A stretch of 64,000 nucleotides of DNA from Caecitellus pseudoparvulus. Its lineage: Eukaryota > Protista > Bigyra: Bicosoecida. A program made the position numbers and the translations under genes. The stretch lies in contig CBFFRQ010000020.1 of assembly GCA_965644315.1 (NCBI GenBank), forward strand, positions 256,534-320,533. The letters are read 5' to 3'. Of this stretch, positions 45,435 to 54,625 are shown piece by piece; positions within the stretch are counted from its first letter, which is position 1; every line of letters starts with the position of its first letter. Below the pieces are notes generated by a model. That model did no database searches, was not told the origin of the DNA, and worked only from the letters and a program-made list of their open reading frames with translations.

Positions 45435-45515
45435 TTCCGTGTCACCAATGCACCCCACCCCTTTTATATGCTGCCAGCCCCGCAACGGCTGCCTGCTGGC
45501 GCCCGGTTGGACGAC

Positions 45516-46823
45516 ATGCGGTTTTTGCGCCGGTGGTCCAGTTTTGCAACCCTCACAACCACCTGCGCTGCTCTCCTCCTACTCAGCGCCCAAGGCAGTG
45601 CAAAGCCCACAGAGTCAGACAAACTGATACATGGGAGTCAGTGCTCCCGCCCGTTGCTGCAGCCCAGCCCTCCTGCGTGCCGCGGGACGCCTGTGCAGTG
45701 GCAGGTGCAGCCAACGCAGGAGGCGCAAGGCCTGCTGCAGCTGACGACGGTCGGGCCCTGCGCGTGGGGCGTGCAGCAGGTCGGACAGGGCGCCTTTCAA
45801 TTCTTCCTGCCCCTGCCCTGGCATGCTGCGTGGAGTGAGCACTCTCAAGCCCTGCAGGCCACCCTGGCATGGCACCGGCGCTCGCGTGGCGCTGACGTGC
45901 CCGTGTCGCTTGCTCTGCACGGCTGCAGCCTGGCGCCCCTGGCGCTGCAGGCACACCTGCTGGGGGCAGTGCACATCCTTGTGGCGTGCGCCAGCGACTG
46001 CCAGCGACGGGAGATGGCCGGCATGTTCGCTCTGTTCGCGGCGTCGTTCGCCAGCCCCACACCCGGCACGCCAGGTGCTGCCCCCGGCCCCCTCCCCCGC
46101 ACCCGGGACATCCTTGTGCTGCAGTACCAGGAGGGGGTGGATGTGGTGGACACCCTCTCCCAGGGGCACGAGCGTGGCGTGTTGCTGCTGGGCCTGCCCC
46201 CCTCGCAGGCTGCCCGCGTGAGGGGCGGGTCCCCCCCACCCTGTGCATCCCTGCTGGCCCTGCCCAGTGACGGCGGCGCCCAGGCCATGCTGTGCATTCG
46301 CGACGTGCCCCAACTGCACACGCCCGCTCACGTCTCCCACATCGTCGCCAGGGGGCGGGAGGTGGTGGTGAAGGTGGTGCCGCAGCAGTACGCGGACATG
46401 GGCGCCTGGGCCCGGGAGGTGTGGTGGCTCCAGCGCACAGCTGCCGAGCCGTGGACACCGCCCCTGCTCTCGGCTGACGCAAGCGACCGCAGCATCGTCA
46501 TGGCATGGGCGGGGCACCCCCTCAACGCCAGCAACCTCCCCGCTGACTGGCATGCGCAGGGCGCGCGCCTGGACGCAGCCCTGGCGGCTGCGGGCTGCAC
46601 GCACAATGACTGGCACGTCGGCAACCTCGTCGTGGGCGACGGTGGCGCCCTGACAGTGCTGGACTTTTCCTGGGCAGCCCACGGCAACGACAGCACCTGT
46701 GGCGGCCTGTGCCCCCCCGCTGCCGCCAAGCCGTACGCCGCAACACCCGCCACCTCCTTCCTCCAGGCGCTGCAGGACTGGGTATCCAACACACGCCCTC
46801 CCCACGGGGCCCACGGCGCATGA
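45516..46823 (+). CDS. Signal-peptide-bearing protein with C-terminal kinase-like (APH/RIO/Kdo-type fold) domain
   Basis: Hydrophobic N-terminus MRFLRRWSSFATLTTTCAALLLLSAQGSA. Kinase-like motifs VVVK, REV, HNDWHVGN and LDFSWA. Confidence 0.6.
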   Translation: MRFLRRWSSFATLTTTCAALLLLSAQGSAKPTESDKLIHGSQCSRPLLQPSPPACRGTPVQWQVQPTQEAQGLLQLTTVGPCAWGVQQVGQGAFQFFLPLPWHAAWSEHSQALQATLAWHRRSRGADVPVSLALHGCSLAPLALQAHLLGAVHILVACASDCQRREMAGMFALFAASFASPTPGTPGAAPGPLPRTRDILVLQYQEGVDVVDTLSQGHERGVLLLGLPPSQAARVRGGSPPPCASLLALPSDGGAQAMLCIRDVPQLHTPAHVSHIVARGREVVVKVVPQQYADMGAWAREVWWLQRTAAEPWTPPLLSADASDRSIVMAWAGHPLNASNLPADWHAQGARLDAALAAAGCTHNDWHVGNLVVGDGGALTVLDFSWAAHGNDSTCGGLCPPAAAKPYAATPATSFLQALQDWVSNTRPPHGAHGA

Positions 46824-46826
46824 GCT

Positions 46827-49800
46827 TCACTCCCCCTTGTGCTCGCCCTCACGCTCCTCCTGCACCTGCGCAGCGTGCACGGTGGCCGGCGCGCCTGCCC
46901 GTGGTGCGGTGCAGTCGCACTTGGACCGCCACAGCACCTGCCGCCGCCCCGCCAAGGAGTACACCTCCTCCGCGGGGATGGCGATGTCGCCGAAGGACAG
47001 GTCCACCACGAAGCTCTGCATGCTGGGCAGCAGGGTGACTTCGCACCAGGTGTGGTCATCCCCCTCCCGCATCCAGCCGGCACCTTCCCCGCCGCCCCCA
47101 TGCACTGTGCCCCCCCGGAACTTGACCTCCAGCCCCAGCAGGGCGCCGAACGGCAGCAGCATGGCGCAGCAGACAGAGGCCTGTGTGTGGCAGTGCCCCT
47201 GCCCATAGTGCACGAGGCGCCCCACCTCCGGCCGGCTGCTGCGACCCACCTCCGCGCCCTGGTTCGGGATGTGCCGGCAGTCGATGACGCCGGTGATGGC
47301 AGTCACTGCCTCCAACTGTGCCTGCAGTGCACCTGCATCGCCTGGGCTGGCATCTGCCAGGTGTGGGCAGATGGTGTCCGCCAGGTGAGCCACGGCCAGC
47401 GCCGCCTCCATCACCTTGCCCCGCGTCAGCAGGTCGGAGTACTTCGCCTCCACGCCGTCCTCGAACAGCACTGCGCCCCGCACGGTCCTACGGAAGCGCG
47501 TCGGCTCGTTCAGCTCAAAGACAGCGGAGCTGGGCACGCTGCGCAGGTCAGTGCCCCCCCCCGGCGTGTCCACTGCCACCAGCATGCGGTGGGGGCTGGC
47601 GGGGTCGGGGCCCTGCACCCGTGCGCGGTGTGTCACCGTCACTTTGCCCTGTCCAGGCGGCATGCCTGCCAGGAAGCGGTCCCCACCCGCCTCCAGCCGC
47701 GCAAACACCTCCGTGCGCACCAGCACGCGCCGCCCACGAGGGTACCGCGGCAGGGCCTCCAGAGCCCCAGACGGCGGCCCCTGCACACTGCACGGCCAAA
47801 CCCCCCAATCCACCAGGTCCTGAGTACTCACCTCTCCAGGGGACAGCGACGGCAGTGCCCCCAGCAGCCGCACAGCTGCCGGGCGCAGGGGCGTGCTGGT
47901 GAGCAGGTGCTGGTATAGCTCCTTCACCTGCCCCCCCTCCACCAGGCCCCGGAAGGCACCCACTGCCCAGCGGGTCAGCGCCTGTCCACTGCTGCAGTCA
48001 GCAGGCGGCGCCAGGGCCTCTGCAGACAGCGCAGGGCTGCTGGCCTGTGCCGTGGTGGTGGGTGCCGGGGGCACTGCCCTGCCTAGCCCCATGGCCCGCT
48101 CAGCCCCCGCGCCAAACACCAAGTCGGCCAAGTCCTCGTCGTCCGTGGCTGACAGCAGTCCGCACAGGGCGGGCGGCGCGGTCGGCAGGGCCACACCAGC
48201 CCCGCTCGCTGACGCACCGCCCGGTGCGGCAGTCGCCCCTGGCGCCCCCTGCAGCAGTGCCTGGAGGATAGCCTCCTCCTCCCGCACAGGCTCGCCCGCG
48301 TCGGTGACAGGCTGGGCCTGGGCGGTGCCCGCCACGTCACTCTTGGGCGGGCGGGTGGCAGGGCCAGCGTCCCCCGCCACCTTCAGCAGCCCCACCACCA
48401 CCTGCTGCAAGACGCTGTCGTCGTACGCCAGCCCCGCGCGAAAGGGGCCTGCTCTGAGCTTGGTGAGGGTGCCCTTGGGCAGGGCGCGGACAATCTTATT
48501 CCCGACCGCCATGGGATGGTTCTGGTCGCTGGTCATCCACATCACTGCCACCGGCACCGACACCTTGTTCAGCGCCACCACCGAGTCTGTCCAGTTGGCA
48601 TGGTACACGCACGCCGCCCTGACCAGGCGGGCCTTGGCGGGGCGGGAGGCCAGTCCGAGGGCCAGGCTGCCGCCGAAATCAAAGCCAAACACCACCGCGC
48701 GTTTCTTGGGCGTCACGCCAAACGCCGCCAGCACACTCTCCACGCAGACCAGCGGGCCACCCTCACCCCACATCTTCTCCGTCCTGCCGCTGCACCTGGG
48801 CACGGCGCGCGAACCGGAAAAACCAGGCAGGTCAATGCCCACGACATGGAAGCCCCGCTCAGCCAGGGCCCGCGCCTCTGTGGCCAGGTTGCTGGCGCCG
48901 CAGCCGGAGCCATATCCGTGCAGCAACACTGCCACCCGCTGCCCCCACGCGCCGTTGTGGTGCACGCACAGCTCCCCTGCTGGCGTCGGCACGTACTGCA
49001 CCTCAAACTGCTGCCAGCACTCCGCGTCCGCCTCGGCCCCCATGGTGAAGGCGGCGCCAGAGGCGGGTTTCCCCGCACGTCGCCCGCGCAGGTCCAGCGT
49101 CGCCGTTTGCACGCGGTCAGCATCCCGCAGCTTGCCTGCAGCGCCCCCCCCCGACCGTGAGACATTGTTCACTGTCTTGTTCACGACCCGCTTGGCCACG
49201 GACCCGAAGCGCAGCGTGCGGGTGGTGAAGCCGGCGTGTTCGCTGGACAGGCTTGCCGTGCACAGCAGCACTGTGCGGGCGTTGCCGCCGAGGGAGTTGG
49301 ACAGGAGCTTGGTCAGGGTGGAGTTCCGGTAGGGGACGAAGGGTGCCTTGTCGGCCAGCGCGTCAATGACTGCTTTGAGGTTGAACAGGCTCAGGTTGAT
49401 GGCCTTGCTCTCGCTGTGGTGCGTGTCGCCGCCGCCCGCCATCAGCACTTCCGCGCCAGCCAAGTCCACGATGTTCAACTCCGAAATGCGCGCCTCGCCG
49501 GTGTCGTTCAGGGCTGTGGCAAGGGTCATGCGGAAGATCGTGTGGGACCGGCTGCTCTTGCCGTGCACGTAGCTCTCCCCCATGCGCTTGTTCGCGCTGC
49601 CGGCAGCCAGCGTCCGCAGCACGGCATGCCGGCTGCTGCAGCTGACCTGGGTCAGCCCAGCAACCCTGAACGCGCCGTCAACTTCCCGAACTGGCAGCGC
49701 CGGCTGAGGTGCGGCGGTGGACGCCTCGGGGCACAGTAGGTCTGTCACGCCCTCATTGTACACCTCCACGAAGGATGCCGACAGCAGCATGCGGGCGCGG

Positions 49801-50253
49801 CCAGCAGCCTGGGCGGCAGCGAAGAAGGCAAACGCCTCATCCAACACGTGCTTCATGACCCCCCCCGCCTGTTCCCCGTCTTCCCCCCTGTGCCCGAACA
49901 TGGTGAAGGTCTTGCCGGACCTGGGCGGCGCGGGAGGTGGACGTGGAGCCAGGCAGCGCAGGGGAGGTTGCTTGTGCGCCGGCCGGCCCGCAGCCTCACC
50001 CAGTCTGCCCAAAGGCGAACACGGTTCCATTGAATCCCGCAAGCCACGACCGGACACAGTGCCTCACCGAGCCCGCGTACACATCGGCGTTCGTCGCGTC
50101 AGGACCGTACACCTGACTGTAAGTCCGGTGTTTGGAGTCTGGGCCCCCACTCACGCCACATGCCGTTGTCTGCCATGGGGGGGAACAGGGCGCCTCGCCA
50201 GAAAACAGTGGTCTGAACCGCACTGCCACTTGGACGGCATCTGCTTGGGGCAT
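46827..50253 (-). CDS. Kinesin motor fused to an alpha/beta-hydrolase and a transglutaminase-like domain (~1115 aa)
   Basis: Exons 50253-50000 and 49920-46827; splicing rebuilds the P-loop GQTGSGKT. Kinesin motifs VAVRFRP, EVYNE, SSRSH, DLAGAE, INLSL and VPYRNSTLTKLL. Then LLHGY...DLPGFSGS...GFDFGG, then GQGHCHT...HTWCEV...VVD. Confidence 0.9.
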
Positions 50254-51209: not shown

Positions 51210-54200
51210 ATGTCAGGAGCAGCAGATGCCCTGGGCGATTTGCTGGGTGAGCAGCGGCGAGTGTGCTGGCGTGCGTGTGGCTATTTGAATGCACCTCTCC
51301 CGCCCGGTGCCCAGCCGAACTGTCGGACGAGTCCGAGCAGGAAGCAGAGGCAGGGAGTGACCCACCCAGCAGCTCAGGAACTGGCTCGTCAAGGGCCCTC
51401 GTGGACCTGGGCGCCAATGCCGCCCCCCAGCGCACAGGGGTGCTGCCCAGCAAAGCAGCTCGGCACGCGGCGCCCTTGCCAAGGCAGCCGGCGCAGCAGC
51501 AGCAGCCGCAGGCGGGGGCCCATGGCGACACCACCGGCAGCGTGGAAACAGAGCGCGTGTCTGGCTTCCGCCTGCGTCAGCGCAAGGTGTCGCAGGCGGA
51601 GATGGACGCGGGGCTGGTGGGGCGCACCTACCTCTCCCTGCGCAAGCTGGCGCGCATGACCGTGGGCGCTGTGGGGGACGTGGCGGCGGGCGGGGAGTGG
51701 CTGACCATCGGCGTCATCGAGACGTCTCGGGGCGCCCGGGACTCTGCCCGTGGCAACCGCTTCGCGTCGTGGGTACTTAGCGACTTCACGCACTCTGCCA
51801 CGGTGCTGCTGTTCGGCGCCGCCTGCGGCACCTTTGGGGCGCTGTCCCCAGGGCACGTCGTGCTGCTGTTCGCGCCCAAGGTGCTGCCGTCCAAGTCTGA
51901 CCCCACGGCCTTCAGCCTGGCCGTGACGGAGGAGCACCAAGTCACGTTGCTGGGGCGCAGTGCAGACTACGGCACCTGCGCCGGCACACGCCGCGACGGC
52001 CAGCCCTGCACCGCCATCGTGAACACCTCCACGGGGCGGTTCTGCAGGTACCACATGGCTGCCGAGTTCAAGCGCCTGGCGTCGGGTCGGGGGGCCTTCT
52101 CCTCCTCCGCCTCAGGCGGCCTGCGCACGGTGGGGGGCACCCGCCGCGGCAACATGTCAGCGGGCGCGTACTCTCGAGAGGCCTTCGCCGTGGCTGACAT
52201 GTCCATGGGGGCAGTGTTCTCTGCAGGCGCCAGCGGGGCGGGGCGGGGCGACGCGCCAGTGCCCCGGGGCGCGTATGGCGGGCAGGTGGGCAAGGCTGCC
52301 ACAGCCATGCGCGCCCTGCAGAAGAAGGTGCGGACAGTGGCCTCCCAGGCCCCCGCCGCGTCACGTGGCGGGGGGGCAGTGGCGCTGCGCATCGCACCCG
52401 ATGGCTCTGCCCGCGCCCCGGGCATGGCCAGCAGGGGGGTGGGCCCACATGCCGCACCCCGGCGCCCCGCCTCCGCCGCCGCTGCCCACCCCTCTCGGGA
52501 CTCCAAGGCCACGCAGGGTCTGGTGCAGGCTGCCCGGGCGAGGGGGGGCGGTGCACAGGCCCTGCGCCGCCCAGCGCCGCGCTCTGGGGGTGGCGGAACA
52601 GGGGCCATGCTGGCCCGGGTGTCTGCGGCGTACAAGCGAGGGGGGGAGGGGCGGGCCGTGGCTGGGCGAGTGGCGGATGCACTCTTGGACTCGGCACGCC
52701 CCCGCAGTGCCGCCGCCCCCCGGCACATGTCACGAGGCGTCAGCCGGGCAGTGGCGGCGCTGAACGCTGTGCGGGGCGGGGTGGGTGTCCTGCACCTGGA
52801 CGACGACGACGACAACAACCCTGGTCGCAGCGCGCGCCGCCTCATGAGCACGCTGACACACGGCATGTCCACGTCCCAGCGCCTGCAGACGGTGGCGCCC
52901 CCCGCAGCCAAGCACTCGGCCTTCCTGGAGTCGCTGGATGCGGCGCGGGGGCGGTGGGCGACAAGGGGTGGCGGGGGGCGGCCCCAGTCACCCGCACCCG
53001 CACCCGCACCGGCCGCCGCTGCCGCACCTACCCCTCACAGCCGACACCATGCACAGAGCAGGGCCAACCCCCCCTCACAACCTGCGAGGGCACCCGCCCC
53101 CCACACGGCGCGTGAGGTGGCGCCTGAGCCCCCCCCTCCCGCCAGCCCCAAGGCCATCCCCCACTTGCAGTCACGGTCGCAGAGCGACTTCCTCGCAGCG
53201 GGGCGGAGCGGCCACTTGGAGGCGCAGGCGTGGGCACAGCGGGCGCTGGGAGGCGGGGCAGACTGTGCGCCTGAGCAGCCGGCAGCGGCACGCGATGCGC
53301 TGGGGGCAGCGCTGACGGGGGATGCAGCTGGCCCAGGTCCACGCCGACCCCCCCCCCGGGCCGCCGCCACCACCACCACCTTCTTGGCTGTCAACACGGC
53401 CCGCGGCCAGCAACGGGAGGTGCTGGCTTCCCGCGTGCAGCGCTCGAACACGCCCTCCCCGTCGCAGTGCGACGTGCTGGACCTGGACGACGACCAGTGC
53501 CTGGCCGCTGCCATGGCTGTCATGGATGCCCTGCCCCAGCACGGTCACCAGCGACCGCCCACGCCGCCTGGGCGAGATGGCGGGGCGACACGGCAGCAGG
53601 GGCCCCCTGCATCGCCCCCCCGCCGCCGCACCAAGTCTGCCCCCCGTCGCCCCACACGGCAACCGCGGCAGCCGGCTCCCTCCCACCCCCGCCCACAGCA
53701 GCCTCAGCGGGCAGACAAGGTGCCAGCCACAGTGGCTGCCTCCTCCCGTGCCGGCGCCATGTTGGGCCTGCACTCTCGTGTTGCCCCGGGCTCCACCCTG
53801 GTGCAGGTGCGGGGGGGGGCGTCCCCGCCTCCTGCCCCCCCCTCCCAGGCGCCGCCACCCCCCGCCCGCCATGGACCCCACACACTGCCCGCCAAACCCC
53901 GCCCCTTGGCGGCCGCCCCGCCTTCCGCCGGGGACATGGTGGTGCAGCGGGGGCTGTACGGGCCCGGGAGGGGGGGGCAGCCCCCCCCCTCCACCTCCAC
54001 CACCGCAACGGGCGGTGTCAAGCGGCCCCGGCCAGCCGACGCGGCCCTCCTACGGCGCCTGGCAGCTGAGCGAGGCAAGAGCACGCCGGCAGCCCAGGCC
54101 AAGGCGCCGCGCCAGGCCGGCGCCATGGGCCCCGGCAGCTTCCTGCGCACAGCCAGCGCGCCAGATGGGCAGTTGACCGCCGCTGCCGCCGTGAGCATTG

Positions 54201-54625
54201 CCGAGGCGGCCTCGTCCATGGAGGGCGAGGCGTCAGCGGCCCGTGTGGAGGGCGTGCTGGCTGGCTTCTCCCGTGCCGAGCGCCTGGAAGCCATGTTCGA
54301 GGCGGCGCCCACGATGCGCAAGGTGCCAGTGTACCAGTGCCTGACCTGCCGCGGGCAGCCGTGCACGCTGGCACCGCCGCCCCTCTGCCGCTCGGAGGGC
54401 CACAACGTGCAGCGCAAGACCAGGAAGCAGTTCGGGTTCCGCTGCACCTCCTGCAGCGCCTTCCTGGCCACCTGGACCGCCGCGCTGGCCACCCCCTGCC
54501 GCCGCTGCGGCTGCCGCTCCTGGCAACCCGCCCCCTTCCTGCACCTGCACAAGGGCCTGGCAGATGTCAGCCACACTCAGCTCTCCAGCACCGGCGGCGA
54601 GGAGGTGCGCTCCCTGCGCCAGTGA
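51210..54625 (+). CDS. MCM10: DNA replication factor Mcm10
   Basis: ERVSGFRLRQR, OB-fold WLTIGVI...FASWVLSD, CCCH finger GTCAGTRRDGQPCTAIVN...FCRYH, and C-terminal zinc motifs CLTC...CRSEGH...CTSC...CRRCG. Short first exon with an intron at ~51247-51315. Confidence 0.9.

What the first reader, a model, noticed from the sequence alone, without database searches (positions are those of the whole stretch)
46827..50253. Kinesin carrying two enzymes: motor + Asp-type alpha/beta-hydrolase + transglutaminase-like domain
Seen: one intron, then a single uninterrupted 3.1-kb frame, so the fusion is not a frameshift artefact. Order: complete motor (to ~49170); hydrolase (~48970-48380; LLHGY, DLPGFSGS, nucleophile elbow GFDFGG); Pro/Ala linker; unknown beta-rich segment (YPRGRRVLVRT...); terminal GQGHCHTQAS...HTWCEV...VVDL (~47210-46990). 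Known: GxDxGG marks the epoxide hydrolase/dehalogenase branch, and G-x-C...H-x-W-x-E...D is the transglutaminase/cysteine-protease triad (PNGase, vasohibin-like fold). Kinesin tails are normally coiled-coil or cargo-binding; no long coiled coil is evident here. Inference: a monomeric microtubule-targeted enzyme, for example one modifying tubulin or axonemal proteins.
Basis: partly seen in the sequence, partly recalled or inferred. Interest (0 to 1): 0.88.

Follow-up and report, generated by a model that had tools for sequence, protein, structure and literature searches.

The report
Kinesin with hydrolase and transglutaminase-like tail
This is a real two-exon gene of a marine flagellate that joins a kinesin motor to an alpha/beta-hydrolase-fold domain and a transglutaminase-like domain with an intact Cys-His-Asp set. 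The same layout recurs in distantly related flagellated eukaryotes, and I found no description of it in the literature I could search.

Summary
On the minus strand, exon 1 (50253-50000), a 79-nt GT..AG intron (49999-49921) and exon 2 (49920-46827) encode about 1115 aa. The domains, in order:
- An N-terminal kinesin motor. The splice rebuilds the P-loop GQTG|SGKT.
- A lid-less alpha/beta-hydrolase domain. It has an Asp nucleophile (GFDFGG) and an invariant DQxH, but no histidine at the usual position.
- A Pro/Ala/Gly linker.
- A helical plus beta-rich segment.
- A transglutaminase-like (TGL) core with C-H-D conserved family-wide.

The fusion is not a read-through artefact. About 50 protein clusters carry all four segments, including ORFs from transcriptome assemblies of Fabomonas, Mastigella, Lacrimia and Diaphanoeca, and proteins of Paratrimastix, Chromera, Prorocentrum and Breviolum.

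The family's motors fall outside kinesin-1, -2, -7, -12 and -14. A single clade is not rejected (p-AU 0.69).

The C-terminal module also occurs alone in bacteria, in a conserved cluster with a PPDK_N protein.

The host genome has 19 dynein heavy chain matches and no light-harvesting proteins.

No paper describing this architecture was found. Enzyme activity, substrate (tubulin or axonemal proteins) and oligomeric state remain inference. An earlier first-stage read of this scan noted the same stretch.

The parts
50000..50253 (-). Exon 1: start codon at 50253-50251 and the N-terminal part of the kinesin motor (RFRP motif, up to GQTG).
   Evidence: Sequence read. Pfam Kinesin E 3.5e-9, profile positions 40-85. 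The N-terminus matches the family consensus V..R.RP.
49921..49999 (-). Intron, 79 nt, GT..AG, phase 2. It splits the P-loop Gly codon.
   Evidence: removal gives GQTG|SGKT. No read or contig spans it, so the splice is inferred from motif restoration and from homologues.
46827..49920 (-). Exon 2, 3094 nt, one open frame to the stop codon at 46829-46827.
49163..49920 (-). Rest of the motor domain plus a neck-linker-like end (KRVVNKTVNNV). Contains SSRSH (switch I), DLAGAE (switch II, with Ser replaced by Ala) and VPYRNSTLT.
   Evidence: Pfam Kinesin E 5e-58. Best solved relatives are kinesin-1, OSM-3 and CENP-E at about 1e-35, with an alignment.
49008..49162 (-). Linker 1 between motor and hydrolase, Gly/Ala/Arg-rich.
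   Evidence: Composition. No Pfam match.
48378..49007 (-). Lid-less alpha/beta-hydrolase-fold domain. Key codons: His of LLHGY at 48920-48918; Asp at the nucleophile elbow (GFDFGG) at 48680-48678; Asp at the acid position at 48527-48525; invariant His of DQxH at 48518-48516.
   Evidence: Pfam. Profile against PDB: Ta0194 4e-24, EphB 5e-21, soluble epoxide hydrolase 3e-18. AF2 pLDDT 89.1 with canonical strand order. Foldseek E about 1e-10, and TM 0.80 on the target to lid-less 3bdi. Residue counts; codons checked.
47988..48377 (-). Linker 2, Pro/Ala/Gly/Ser-rich (56%), low complexity.
   Evidence: Contigs from runs labelled metatranscriptomic are colinear with the genome across it (records 4 and 5).
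47805..47987 (-). Small helical subdomain at the start of the conserved C-terminal module.
   Evidence: AF2 helices at model residues 24-84, pLDDT above 95. Conserved in alignment A1.
47442..47759 (-). Beta-rich domain (contains YPRGRRVLVRT). It always precedes the TGL core, in the kinesins and in the bacterial stand-alone proteins.
   Evidence: AF2 strands at model residues 110-175. The 'mid' segment co-occurs with 'tg'. R104, G108 and R109 are near-invariant or invariant.
46932..47432 (-). Transglutaminase-like (papain-fold) core. Cys 47192-47190 (GQGHCH), His 47054-47052 and Trp 47048-47046 (HTWCEV), Asp 47003-47001 (VVDLS).
   Evidence: Transglut_core E 0.011 for this sequence. 31 of 64 family members hit it, best 6.7e-5. 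All top Foldseek and VIA-align matches are transglutaminase-fold proteins, Z up to 7.2. All atlas rows are Transglut_core. C/H/D align with a PNGase-like protein of the same genome. Conservation; codons checked.
46830..46931 (-). C-terminal tail, low-confidence and charged.
   Evidence: pLDDT below 55 from model residue ~380.

Best explanation
Shown: this is a genuine single gene for an N-terminal-motor kinesin of an unnamed family that is conserved but patchily distributed across eukaryotes. Its tail is built from enzyme-fold domains instead of a coiled-coil stalk.

The motor keeps all nucleotide-binding and microtubule-binding motifs and a neck-linker-like end. It should therefore bind microtubules and probably walk toward plus ends (inferred).

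The tail carries two modules:
(i) A lid-less alpha/beta-hydrolase domain derived from the epoxide-hydrolase-like branch. It has a conserved Asp at the nucleophile elbow, an acid residue, and an invariant His three residues after the acid, in place of the usual post-beta8 His.
(ii) A helical plus beta-rich plus transglutaminase-like module whose Cys-His-Asp set is conserved across the family (Cys invariant, His and Asp in 90% or more of the aligned fusion proteins).

Most likely mechanism (inferred): the motor places a thiol enzyme of the transglutaminase/papain fold (peptidase, deamidase or transamidase) on microtubules, where it acts on tubulin tails or on microtubule- or axoneme-bound proteins. 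The hydrolase-like domain would serve either as a second, non-canonical catalytic site or as a binding module.
For: One gene:
- The intron restores the P-loop.
- The four-segment layout recurs in about 50 clusters at 50% identity.
- It includes ORFs from transcriptome assemblies (Trinity/TSA): Fabomonas P0008, Mastigella P0011, Lacrimia P0030, Diaphanoeca P0062 and TSA GFYU01004794 P0013.
- It also includes proteins from Paratrimastix P0015, Chromera P0025, Prorocentrum P0022 and Breviolum P0037.

Motor: Pfam 5e-58. The family consensus keeps GQTGSGKT, SSRSH, DLAGSE and VPYR.

Distinct family: the motor tree puts the family outside the kinesin-1, -2, -7, -12 and -14 groups and outside the side of the tree holding 16 of the 17 sampled kinesins of the same genome. 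The tree with all family motors held together is 7 lnL units better than the free search, p-AU 0.69.

Hydrolase. Asp at the nucleophile elbow in 45 of 46 members, acid D/E in 46 of 46, His of DQxH in 46 of 46.

TGL. Cys is invariant, and His and Asp are present in 90% or more of the 38 fusion proteins aligned.

Context: the genome has 19 dynein heavy chain matches, so it probably builds flagella (inferred), and only one copy of the C-terminal module. TGL-fold chains from solved axoneme structures appear among the structural neighbours (9y6s, 7n6g, 9e5c). A published prediction holds that active ciliary TGL domains act on tubulin tags or ciliary proteins (PMC3495828).
Against: - No activity, localisation or substrate data exist.
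- The window's own TGL match is below Pfam's cut-off. Fold matches are middling (Foldseek E at or above 0.012, Z about 7).
- Triad geometry could not be inspected because the tool returns no coordinates.
- The hydrolase domain lacks the canonical His and the lid, so it may be a pseudo-enzyme.
- No read or contig crosses the intron. The covering runs are labelled metatranscriptomic but flagged 'probably DNA', so there is no direct transcript proof for this organism.
- Vasohibin, the known tubulin-acting TGL-fold enzyme, was not among the 50 matches listed by each search.
- The tree lacks labelled kinesin-3, -4, -5, -6, -8, -9, -13, -16 and -17 references.
Confidence: 0.68

Rival explanations
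1. The tail domains are pseudo-enzymes. The hydrolase-like and TGL domains would only bind cargo or peptides, as inactive TGL domains do in Rad4, Cyk3 and CC2D2A. The protein would then be an ordinary transport kinesin with unusual cargo adaptors.
For: The canonical hydrolase His is absent and the post-beta8 loop is not conserved. There is no lid. Inactive TGL domains that bind peptides are documented in ciliary proteins (PMC3495828).
Against: The TGL Cys is invariant and His and Asp are near-invariant across supergroups. The hydrolase Asp, acid and DQxH His are kept in 45-46 of 46 members. That pattern is typical of retained chemistry rather than binding alone.
Confidence: 0.22
2. Gene-model artefact. 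In DNA of 70% G+C, stop codons are rare, so two or three neighbouring genes (kinesin, hydrolase, TGL protein) are merely read through as one frame.
For: Long spurious ORFs of 300-480 aa occur in other frames of the same stretch. No transcript evidence spans the whole gene in this organism.
Against: The same order in one ORF appears in transcriptome-derived proteins of several unrelated species and in AT-rich relatives such as P0146. Contigs from the covering runs bridge the motor-linker, hydrolase-linker and linker-module junctions colinearly (records 15, 5 and 4). There is no internal start context or terminator.
Confidence: 0.03
3. The middle domain is a working epoxide hydrolase or dehalogenase-type enzyme acting on a small molecule, and the kinesin merely localises that metabolism.
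For: The profile matches EphB and soluble epoxide hydrolase at 1e-18 to 1e-21 over the N-terminal half, with GYDWGG aligned to GHDWG. An HG motif is present.
Against: Matches stop before the lid. The model has no lid domain, so the lid Tyr or Trp residues that such enzymes need are missing (established knowledge). The catalytic His position is not conserved.
Confidence: 0.07

Closest known systems
N-terminal-motor kinesins (kinesin-1, kinesin-2/OSM-3, kinesin-7/CENP-E are the closest solved motors)
   Same: P-loop, switch I, switch II (DxxGxE), the VPYR microtubule-binding motif and a neck-linker-like sequence. About 1e-35 to solved motors.
   Different: It does not group with any of them in the motor tree. 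There is no coiled-coil stalk, and the tail is made of enzyme-fold domains. The Pfam score of about 200 bits is low compared with most kinesins of the same genome.
Ciliary/centrosomal TGL proteins (CCDC135/DRC7, CEP76, CC2D2A; Zhang and Aravind 2012, PMC3495828) and TGL-fold chains in solved axonemes
   Same: A transglutaminase-like papain fold in proteins tied to microtubule structures, a predicted bacterial origin, and some versions with an intact triad.
   Different: Those proteins carry C2 domains or coiled coils, not a motor or a hydrolase. No sequence-level link to them was found here. This module has its own helical plus beta-rich N-terminal part.
Vasohibins (tubulin detyrosinases of the transglutaminase-like cysteine protease fold)
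   Same: A TGL-fold thiol enzyme that works on microtubules (established knowledge). It is the model for the proposed mechanism.
   Different: No vasohibin among the 50 matches listed by each fold search. Vasohibins rely on SVBP and have no motor. The similarity is functional analogy only.
Animal transglutaminases (factor XIII, TG2, TG3), PNGase, LapG and arylamine N-acetyltransferases
   Same: They are the best structural neighbours: Z 5.4-7.2, 135-182 aligned residues, rmsd 4-5 A. The C/H/D set aligns in register with a PNGase-like protein of the same genome.
   Different: Identity is 7-14%. No sequence hit to any solved chain. Which chemistry applies (cross-linking, proteolysis, deamidation, acyl transfer) cannot be told from the fold.
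Ta0194 of Thermoplasma acidophilum (PDB 3bdi), a lid-less minimal alpha/beta-hydrolase, and epoxide hydrolases EphB and soluble epoxide hydrolase
   Same: Same fold and size as 3bdi (profile E 4e-24; TM 0.80 on the target). The N-terminal half, including the nucleophile elbow, resembles epoxide hydrolases.
   Different: The nucleophile position is Asp, where the aligned 3bdi sequence has Ser (GASMGG against GYDWGG). The lid of epoxide hydrolases and the canonical His are absent. An invariant DQxH is found instead.
Bacterial stand-alone homologues of the C-terminal module (for example a 536-aa hypothetical protein of a deltaproteobacterial MAG)
   Same: The same helical, beta-rich and TGL module, E 1e-106 to 1e-118 to the family profile.
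   Different: No motor and no hydrolase domain. They are encoded beside a 1160-aa-class PPDK_N-domain protein, an SCP2-like protein and a conserved protein of about 73 aa, or fused to PPDK_N (P0023).

Membership tests
Kinesin superfamily (Pfam PF00225) | Profile score above the curated cut-off | tested here: met
   197 bits for exon 2 and 36.6 bits for exon 1, against a cut-off of 29.3.
Kinesin superfamily (Pfam PF00225) | P-loop GQTxSGKT, switch I SSRSH, switch II DxxGxE | tested here: met
   GQTG|SGKT across the splice; SSRSH and DLAGAE at model positions 207 and 237. Switch II has Ala where most kinesins have Ser; the family consensus is DLAGSE.
Named kinesin families 1, 2, 7, 12, 14 | Motor domain groups inside the family's clade | tested here: not met
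   Kinesin-7 (96*), kinesin-12 (98*) and kinesin-1 (80) each form their own group, all on the other side of a 90-support branch that holds no fusion-family motor.
Kinesin-17, kinesin-9, kinesin-16 and other cilium-linked families | Motor domain groups with labelled reference members | not tested
   No labelled reference sequences were available as session objects. The Wickstead 2010 tables list Kinesin-17 members as KISc only, and no hydrolase or transglutaminase architecture appears among 1624 kinesins.
Alpha/beta-hydrolase fold | Canonical beta-sheet/helix order with a nucleophile elbow after strand 5 | tested here: met
   AF2 pLDDT 89.1 with the strand and helix order listed. Foldseek E about 1e-10 to many hydrolases. 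G-x-D-x-G after strand 115-120 of the model.
Alpha/beta-hydrolase fold | Catalytic His in the loop after the last core strand | tested here: not met
   The columns after strand 190-195 hold no conserved His; the window has Pro there. An invariant His sits three residues after the acid instead.
Epoxide hydrolase / haloalkane dehalogenase branch | Asp nucleophile in sm-x-D-x-sm and an HGxP-type oxyanion motif | tested here: met
   D in 45 of 46 members. The family consensus LHGxPS aligns with EphB and soluble epoxide hydrolase. The window itself reads LLHGYGS.
Epoxide hydrolase / haloalkane dehalogenase branch | Lid domain carrying substrate-activating residues | tested here: not met
   Only one short helix lies between strands 6 and 7 of the model. 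The best target-side match is lid-less 3bdi, and profile matches to epoxide hydrolases stop before the lid.
Transglutaminase-like superfamily (Pfam PF01841) | Profile score above the curated cut-off | tested here: not met
   14.7-16.4 bits against 23 for the window. 31 of 64 family members match at E below 0.1, best 6.7e-5.
Transglutaminase-like superfamily (Pfam PF01841) | Papain-like fold with Cys on a helix, then His and Asp on successive strands | tested here: met
   Model pLDDT 91.9. Cys 289 starts helix 289-307; His 335 and Asp 352 lie on strands 335-342 and 347-352. All top structural matches are of this fold. C/H/D align in register with a PNGase-like protein. Spatial adjacency was not inspected.
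Vasohibin family | Sequence or fold match to vasohibin | tested here: inconclusive
   No vasohibin among the 50 matches listed by each of Foldseek and VIA-align. Weaker matches were not listed.

The most novel reading that the evidence does not exclude
This would be a kinesin family dating to the early radiation of eukaryotes. It is present in Opisthokonta, Amoebozoa, Metamonada, Discoba, Alveolata and Ancyromonadida, and lost from animals, fungi, plants and the usual models. It would carry its own thiol enzyme along microtubules as a motor-coupled modifier of tubulin tails or axonemal proteins. Its catalytic module would descend from a bacterial gene cluster (TGL module, PPDK_N enzyme, SCP2-like protein, small 73-aa protein) that modifies a small protein or peptide.
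Probability: 0.2. Interest if true: 0.85.

Novelty: new variant of a known kind. Interest (0 to 1): 0.66.

Why it matters
Kinesin tails are normally stalks and cargo adaptors. In the 2010 survey of 1624 kinesins, no hydrolase or transglutaminase tail was recorded. This family carries two enzyme-fold domains with conserved active-site-like residues, and it is kept across at least six major eukaryotic lineages.

If the TGL domain is active, this would be a motor that delivers a protein-modifying enzyme directly to its track. That makes it a new and directly testable candidate for enzymes that edit the tubulin code or remodel axonemal proteins.

The family also links a eukaryotic cytoskeletal protein to an uncharacterised bacterial gene cluster. 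That link gives a second experimental route to the module's chemistry.

Tried and rejected
- Sequence searches of the C-terminal 491 aa and of its family profile against solved structures gave nothing meaningful.
- The ESM Atlas feature search of the exon-2 product gave no usable hit.
- hhalign of the module profile against two further Transglut_core proteins of the same genome found no alignment. Only the PNGase-like one aligned.
- Looking up assembly accession GCA_024449685/JAANST and the protein accessions Cvel_4014, A0A0G4G145 and CAK0904714 in the paper library gave nothing relevant.
- Paper searches combining kinesin with hydrolase, abhydrolase or transglutaminase-like terms found no description of the architecture.
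- Read laying reported a 'joint' 47673>49800 in all four runs. Each side is only 20 letters with 59 foreign letters between, and it also occurs in the DNA assembly run. I take it as a chance or short-repeat match from another locus, not splicing.
- The runs labelled metatranscriptomic could not be shown to be RNA, because no contig crosses the intron.
- The organism could not be named. 18S copies were located, but no tool compares them with a reference collection.
- The spliced full-length protein was assembled only inside a local script, for length and motif numbering. All database, family and structure searches were made exon by exon or domain by domain by reference. No search or fold of the joined protein was made.
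Full report
**1. What is in the sequence**

The minus strand carries an open frame of 1076 codons at 46827-50057. Upstream of it, in another frame, a short frame starts with ATG at 50253 and reads MPQADAVQVAVRFRP...FAFGQTG before a stop.

The DNA shows GT at 49999-49998 and AG at 49922-49921. Removing these 79 nt joins GG|G and gives GQTG|SGKT, the kinesin P-loop. The gene model is therefore:
- exon 1: 50253-50000
- intron: 49999-49921
- exon 2: 49920-46827
- product: 1115 aa

I assembled the spliced product only in a local script, for numbering. Every search and fold was done exon by exon or domain by domain by reference, and no search of the joined protein was made.

**2. Domains**

Motor:
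- Pfam finds the kinesin motor in both exons (E 5e-58 and 3.5e-9).
- Pfam finds an alpha/beta-hydrolase after it (Abhydrolase_1/_6 at about 1e-7).
- The motor keeps RFRP, GQTGSGKT, SSRSH, DLAGAE (Ala in place of the usual Ser), VPYRNSTLT and LGGN. It ends in a neck-linker-like KRVVNKTVNNV.
- Its best solved relatives are kinesin-1, OSM-3 and CENP-E, all near 1e-35. None is clearly closest.

Hydrolase domain (46 family members aligned):
- It matches lid-less Ta0194 (3bdi, 4e-24), and epoxide hydrolases EphB and soluble epoxide hydrolase over its N-terminal half.
- It folds confidently (pLDDT 89.1) with canonical topology and no lid.
- It matches many hydrolases by Foldseek at about 1e-10.
- The elbow Asp is kept in 45 of 46 members, the acid position in 46 of 46, and a His three residues later (DQxH) in 46 of 46.
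- The loop after the last strand, where the catalytic His normally sits, holds no conserved His.
- It is therefore an epoxide-hydrolase-derived, lid-less domain with a non-canonical residue set. It is not a typical epoxide hydrolase or dehalogenase.

C-terminal module (409 aa):
- It folds at pLDDT 91.9, pTM 0.90.
- It consists of a small helical part, a beta-rich domain, and a core in which Cys289 opens a helix while His335 and Asp352 lie on successive strands.
- Pfam Transglut_core is below cut-off for the window (E 0.011). It is hit by 31 of 64 family members.
- Every top Foldseek, VIA-align and Atlas neighbour is a transglutaminase-fold protein: factor XIII, TG2/3, PNGase, LapG, arylamine N-acetyltransferases, TglA and three TGL-fold chains from solved axonemes. 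The scores are middling (Z up to 7.2).
- A profile-to-sequence alignment with a PNGase-like protein of the same genome puts C, H and D in register.
- In 38 aligned fusion proteins the Cys is invariant, and His and Asp are present in 90% or more.

Linkers: the two linkers are 36% and 56% Pro/Gly/Ala/Ser, and no coiled-coil stalk is apparent. No coiled-coil predictor was run.

**3. Is the fusion real?**

A search of 1.84 billion representatives with the C-terminal 491 aa gave 158 hits. A local phmmer run with four separate pieces showed about 50 clusters that carry motor, hydrolase, middle and TGL segments in that order.

Named members:
- Transcriptome-assembly ORFs (Trinity/TSA): Fabomonas tropica, Mastigella eilhardi, Lacrimia lanifica, Diaphanoeca grandis and TSA GFYU01004794.
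- Other sources: Paratrimastix pyriformis, Chromera velia, Prorocentrum cordatum and Breviolum minutum.

Single transcripts in several unrelated species rule out read-through of neighbouring genes.

For this organism itself, contigs from three seawater runs labelled metatranscriptomic cover all domains in pieces and bridge the domain junctions colinearly. None crosses the intron, and the runs may be DNA. A 19.6-kb contig from another run is about 98.9% identical over the 5.6 kb laid, probably a second strain of the same organism (inference).

**4. Family placement**

I built a motor-domain tree of 84 rows: family members, 17 kinesins of the same genome, and named kinesin-1, -2, -7, -12 and -14 sequences.
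- All named groups and 16 of the 17 own-genome kinesins fall on one side of the tree, with no fusion-family motor among them.
- The family motors lie on the other side, in two well-supported subclades plus a few unresolved members.
- Holding all 30 family rows together gives a better likelihood than the free search, p-AU 0.69. A single origin of the fusion is compatible with the data.
- Labelled references for kinesin-3, -4, -5, -6, -8, -9, -13, -16 and -17 were not available, so identity with one of those is not excluded.
- The Wickstead 2010 tables of 1624 kinesins list no hydrolase or transglutaminase architecture.

**5. Organism and context**

- The assembly is 30.6 Mb in 215 contigs and G+C-rich.
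- It has 19 dynein heavy chain matches, 88 kinesin-motor matches and no light-harvesting proteins.
- The runs that hold the sequence are seawater samples.
- It is probably a marine heterotrophic flagellate. The name is undetermined.
- The C-terminal module occurs once in the genome.
- All named taxa with the family build flagella at some stage (my own knowledge, not tested).

**6. Bacterial relatives**

The helical, beta-rich and TGL module also occurs alone (440-540 aa) in bacteria, for example in a deltaproteobacterial MAG.
- In three independent contigs it lies in one cluster with a PPDK_N-domain protein of about 1165 aa, an SCP2-like protein and a conserved protein of about 73 aa.
- In P0023 the module is fused to the PPDK_N protein.
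- This points to an ancestral role in an ATP-dependent modification of a small protein or peptide. That is inference.

**7. Mechanism and comparison**

Shown:
- a motor with intact motifs
- two enzyme-fold tail domains
- family-wide conservation of active-site-like residues

Inferred:
- the motor tethers a thiol enzyme of the transglutaminase/papain fold to microtubules
- tubulin tails or microtubule- or axoneme-bound proteins are the substrates

This parallels vasohibins functionally and fits the prediction made for active ciliary TGL domains (PMC3495828). No vasohibin match was listed, and no activity is known.

The main rival is that both tail domains are binding-only pseudo-enzymes.

**8. 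Verdict**

The architecture is real, ancient and apparently undescribed in the searchable literature. I rate it a new variant of a known kind (a kinesin with an enzyme-fold tail), of moderately high interest.

Noticed in passing
L005:3929-9611, L008:3946-9623, L009:7769-13820, L010:5709-12476: Bacterial stand-alone homologues of the C-terminal module sit in a conserved cluster with a PPDK_N-domain protein of about 1165 aa, an SCP2-like protein of about 105-114 aa and a conserved protein of about 73 aa (invariant HS, P and YW). One locus adds a Gln_deamidase_2 gene. In L010 the module and the PPDK_N protein are fused into one 2062-aa protein. It looks like an uncharacterised protein- or peptide-modification system.
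   Followed up: partly
window 45468-46823 (+): A 451-aa ORF on the opposite strand ends 3 bp from the kinesin's stop codon, so the two genes converge with essentially no intergenic DNA. One contig from a run labelled metatranscriptomic (46281-47062) spans both gene ends.
   Followed up: no
G000 whole genome: For a 30.6-Mb genome the motor repertoire is large: 19 dynein heavy chain matches in open frames of 3400-7000 aa, and 88 kinesin-motor matches. Open frames of this length suggest very few introns.
   Followed up: partly
window 1-64000: G+C swings from 55-60% (10-16 kb and 58-64 kb) to 75-79% (22-38 kb), with a strong negative GC skew in the first 10 kb. The composition is very uneven within 64 kb.
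   Followed up: no
window 51263-54625 (+): A 1120-codon open frame, rich in Ala, Pro, Gly, Ser and Arg, lies just upstream of the kinesin on the other strand. Its C-terminal part has Cys-rich, zinc-finger-like spacing (C..C...C..C).
   Followed up: no
P0036, P0084, P0095, P0135, P0055: Some family members of 630-760 aa carry hydrolase, middle and TGL segments but no motor. They may be truncated gene calls on intron-containing genes, or true motor-less paralogues.
   Followed up: no
G000:C38:134864-135772 (L038): One kinesin of the same genome (open frame 1381 aa) falls in the unresolved polytomy next to fusion-family motors rather than with the other kinesins. It might be the nearest paralogue without the enzyme tail.
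   Followed up: no
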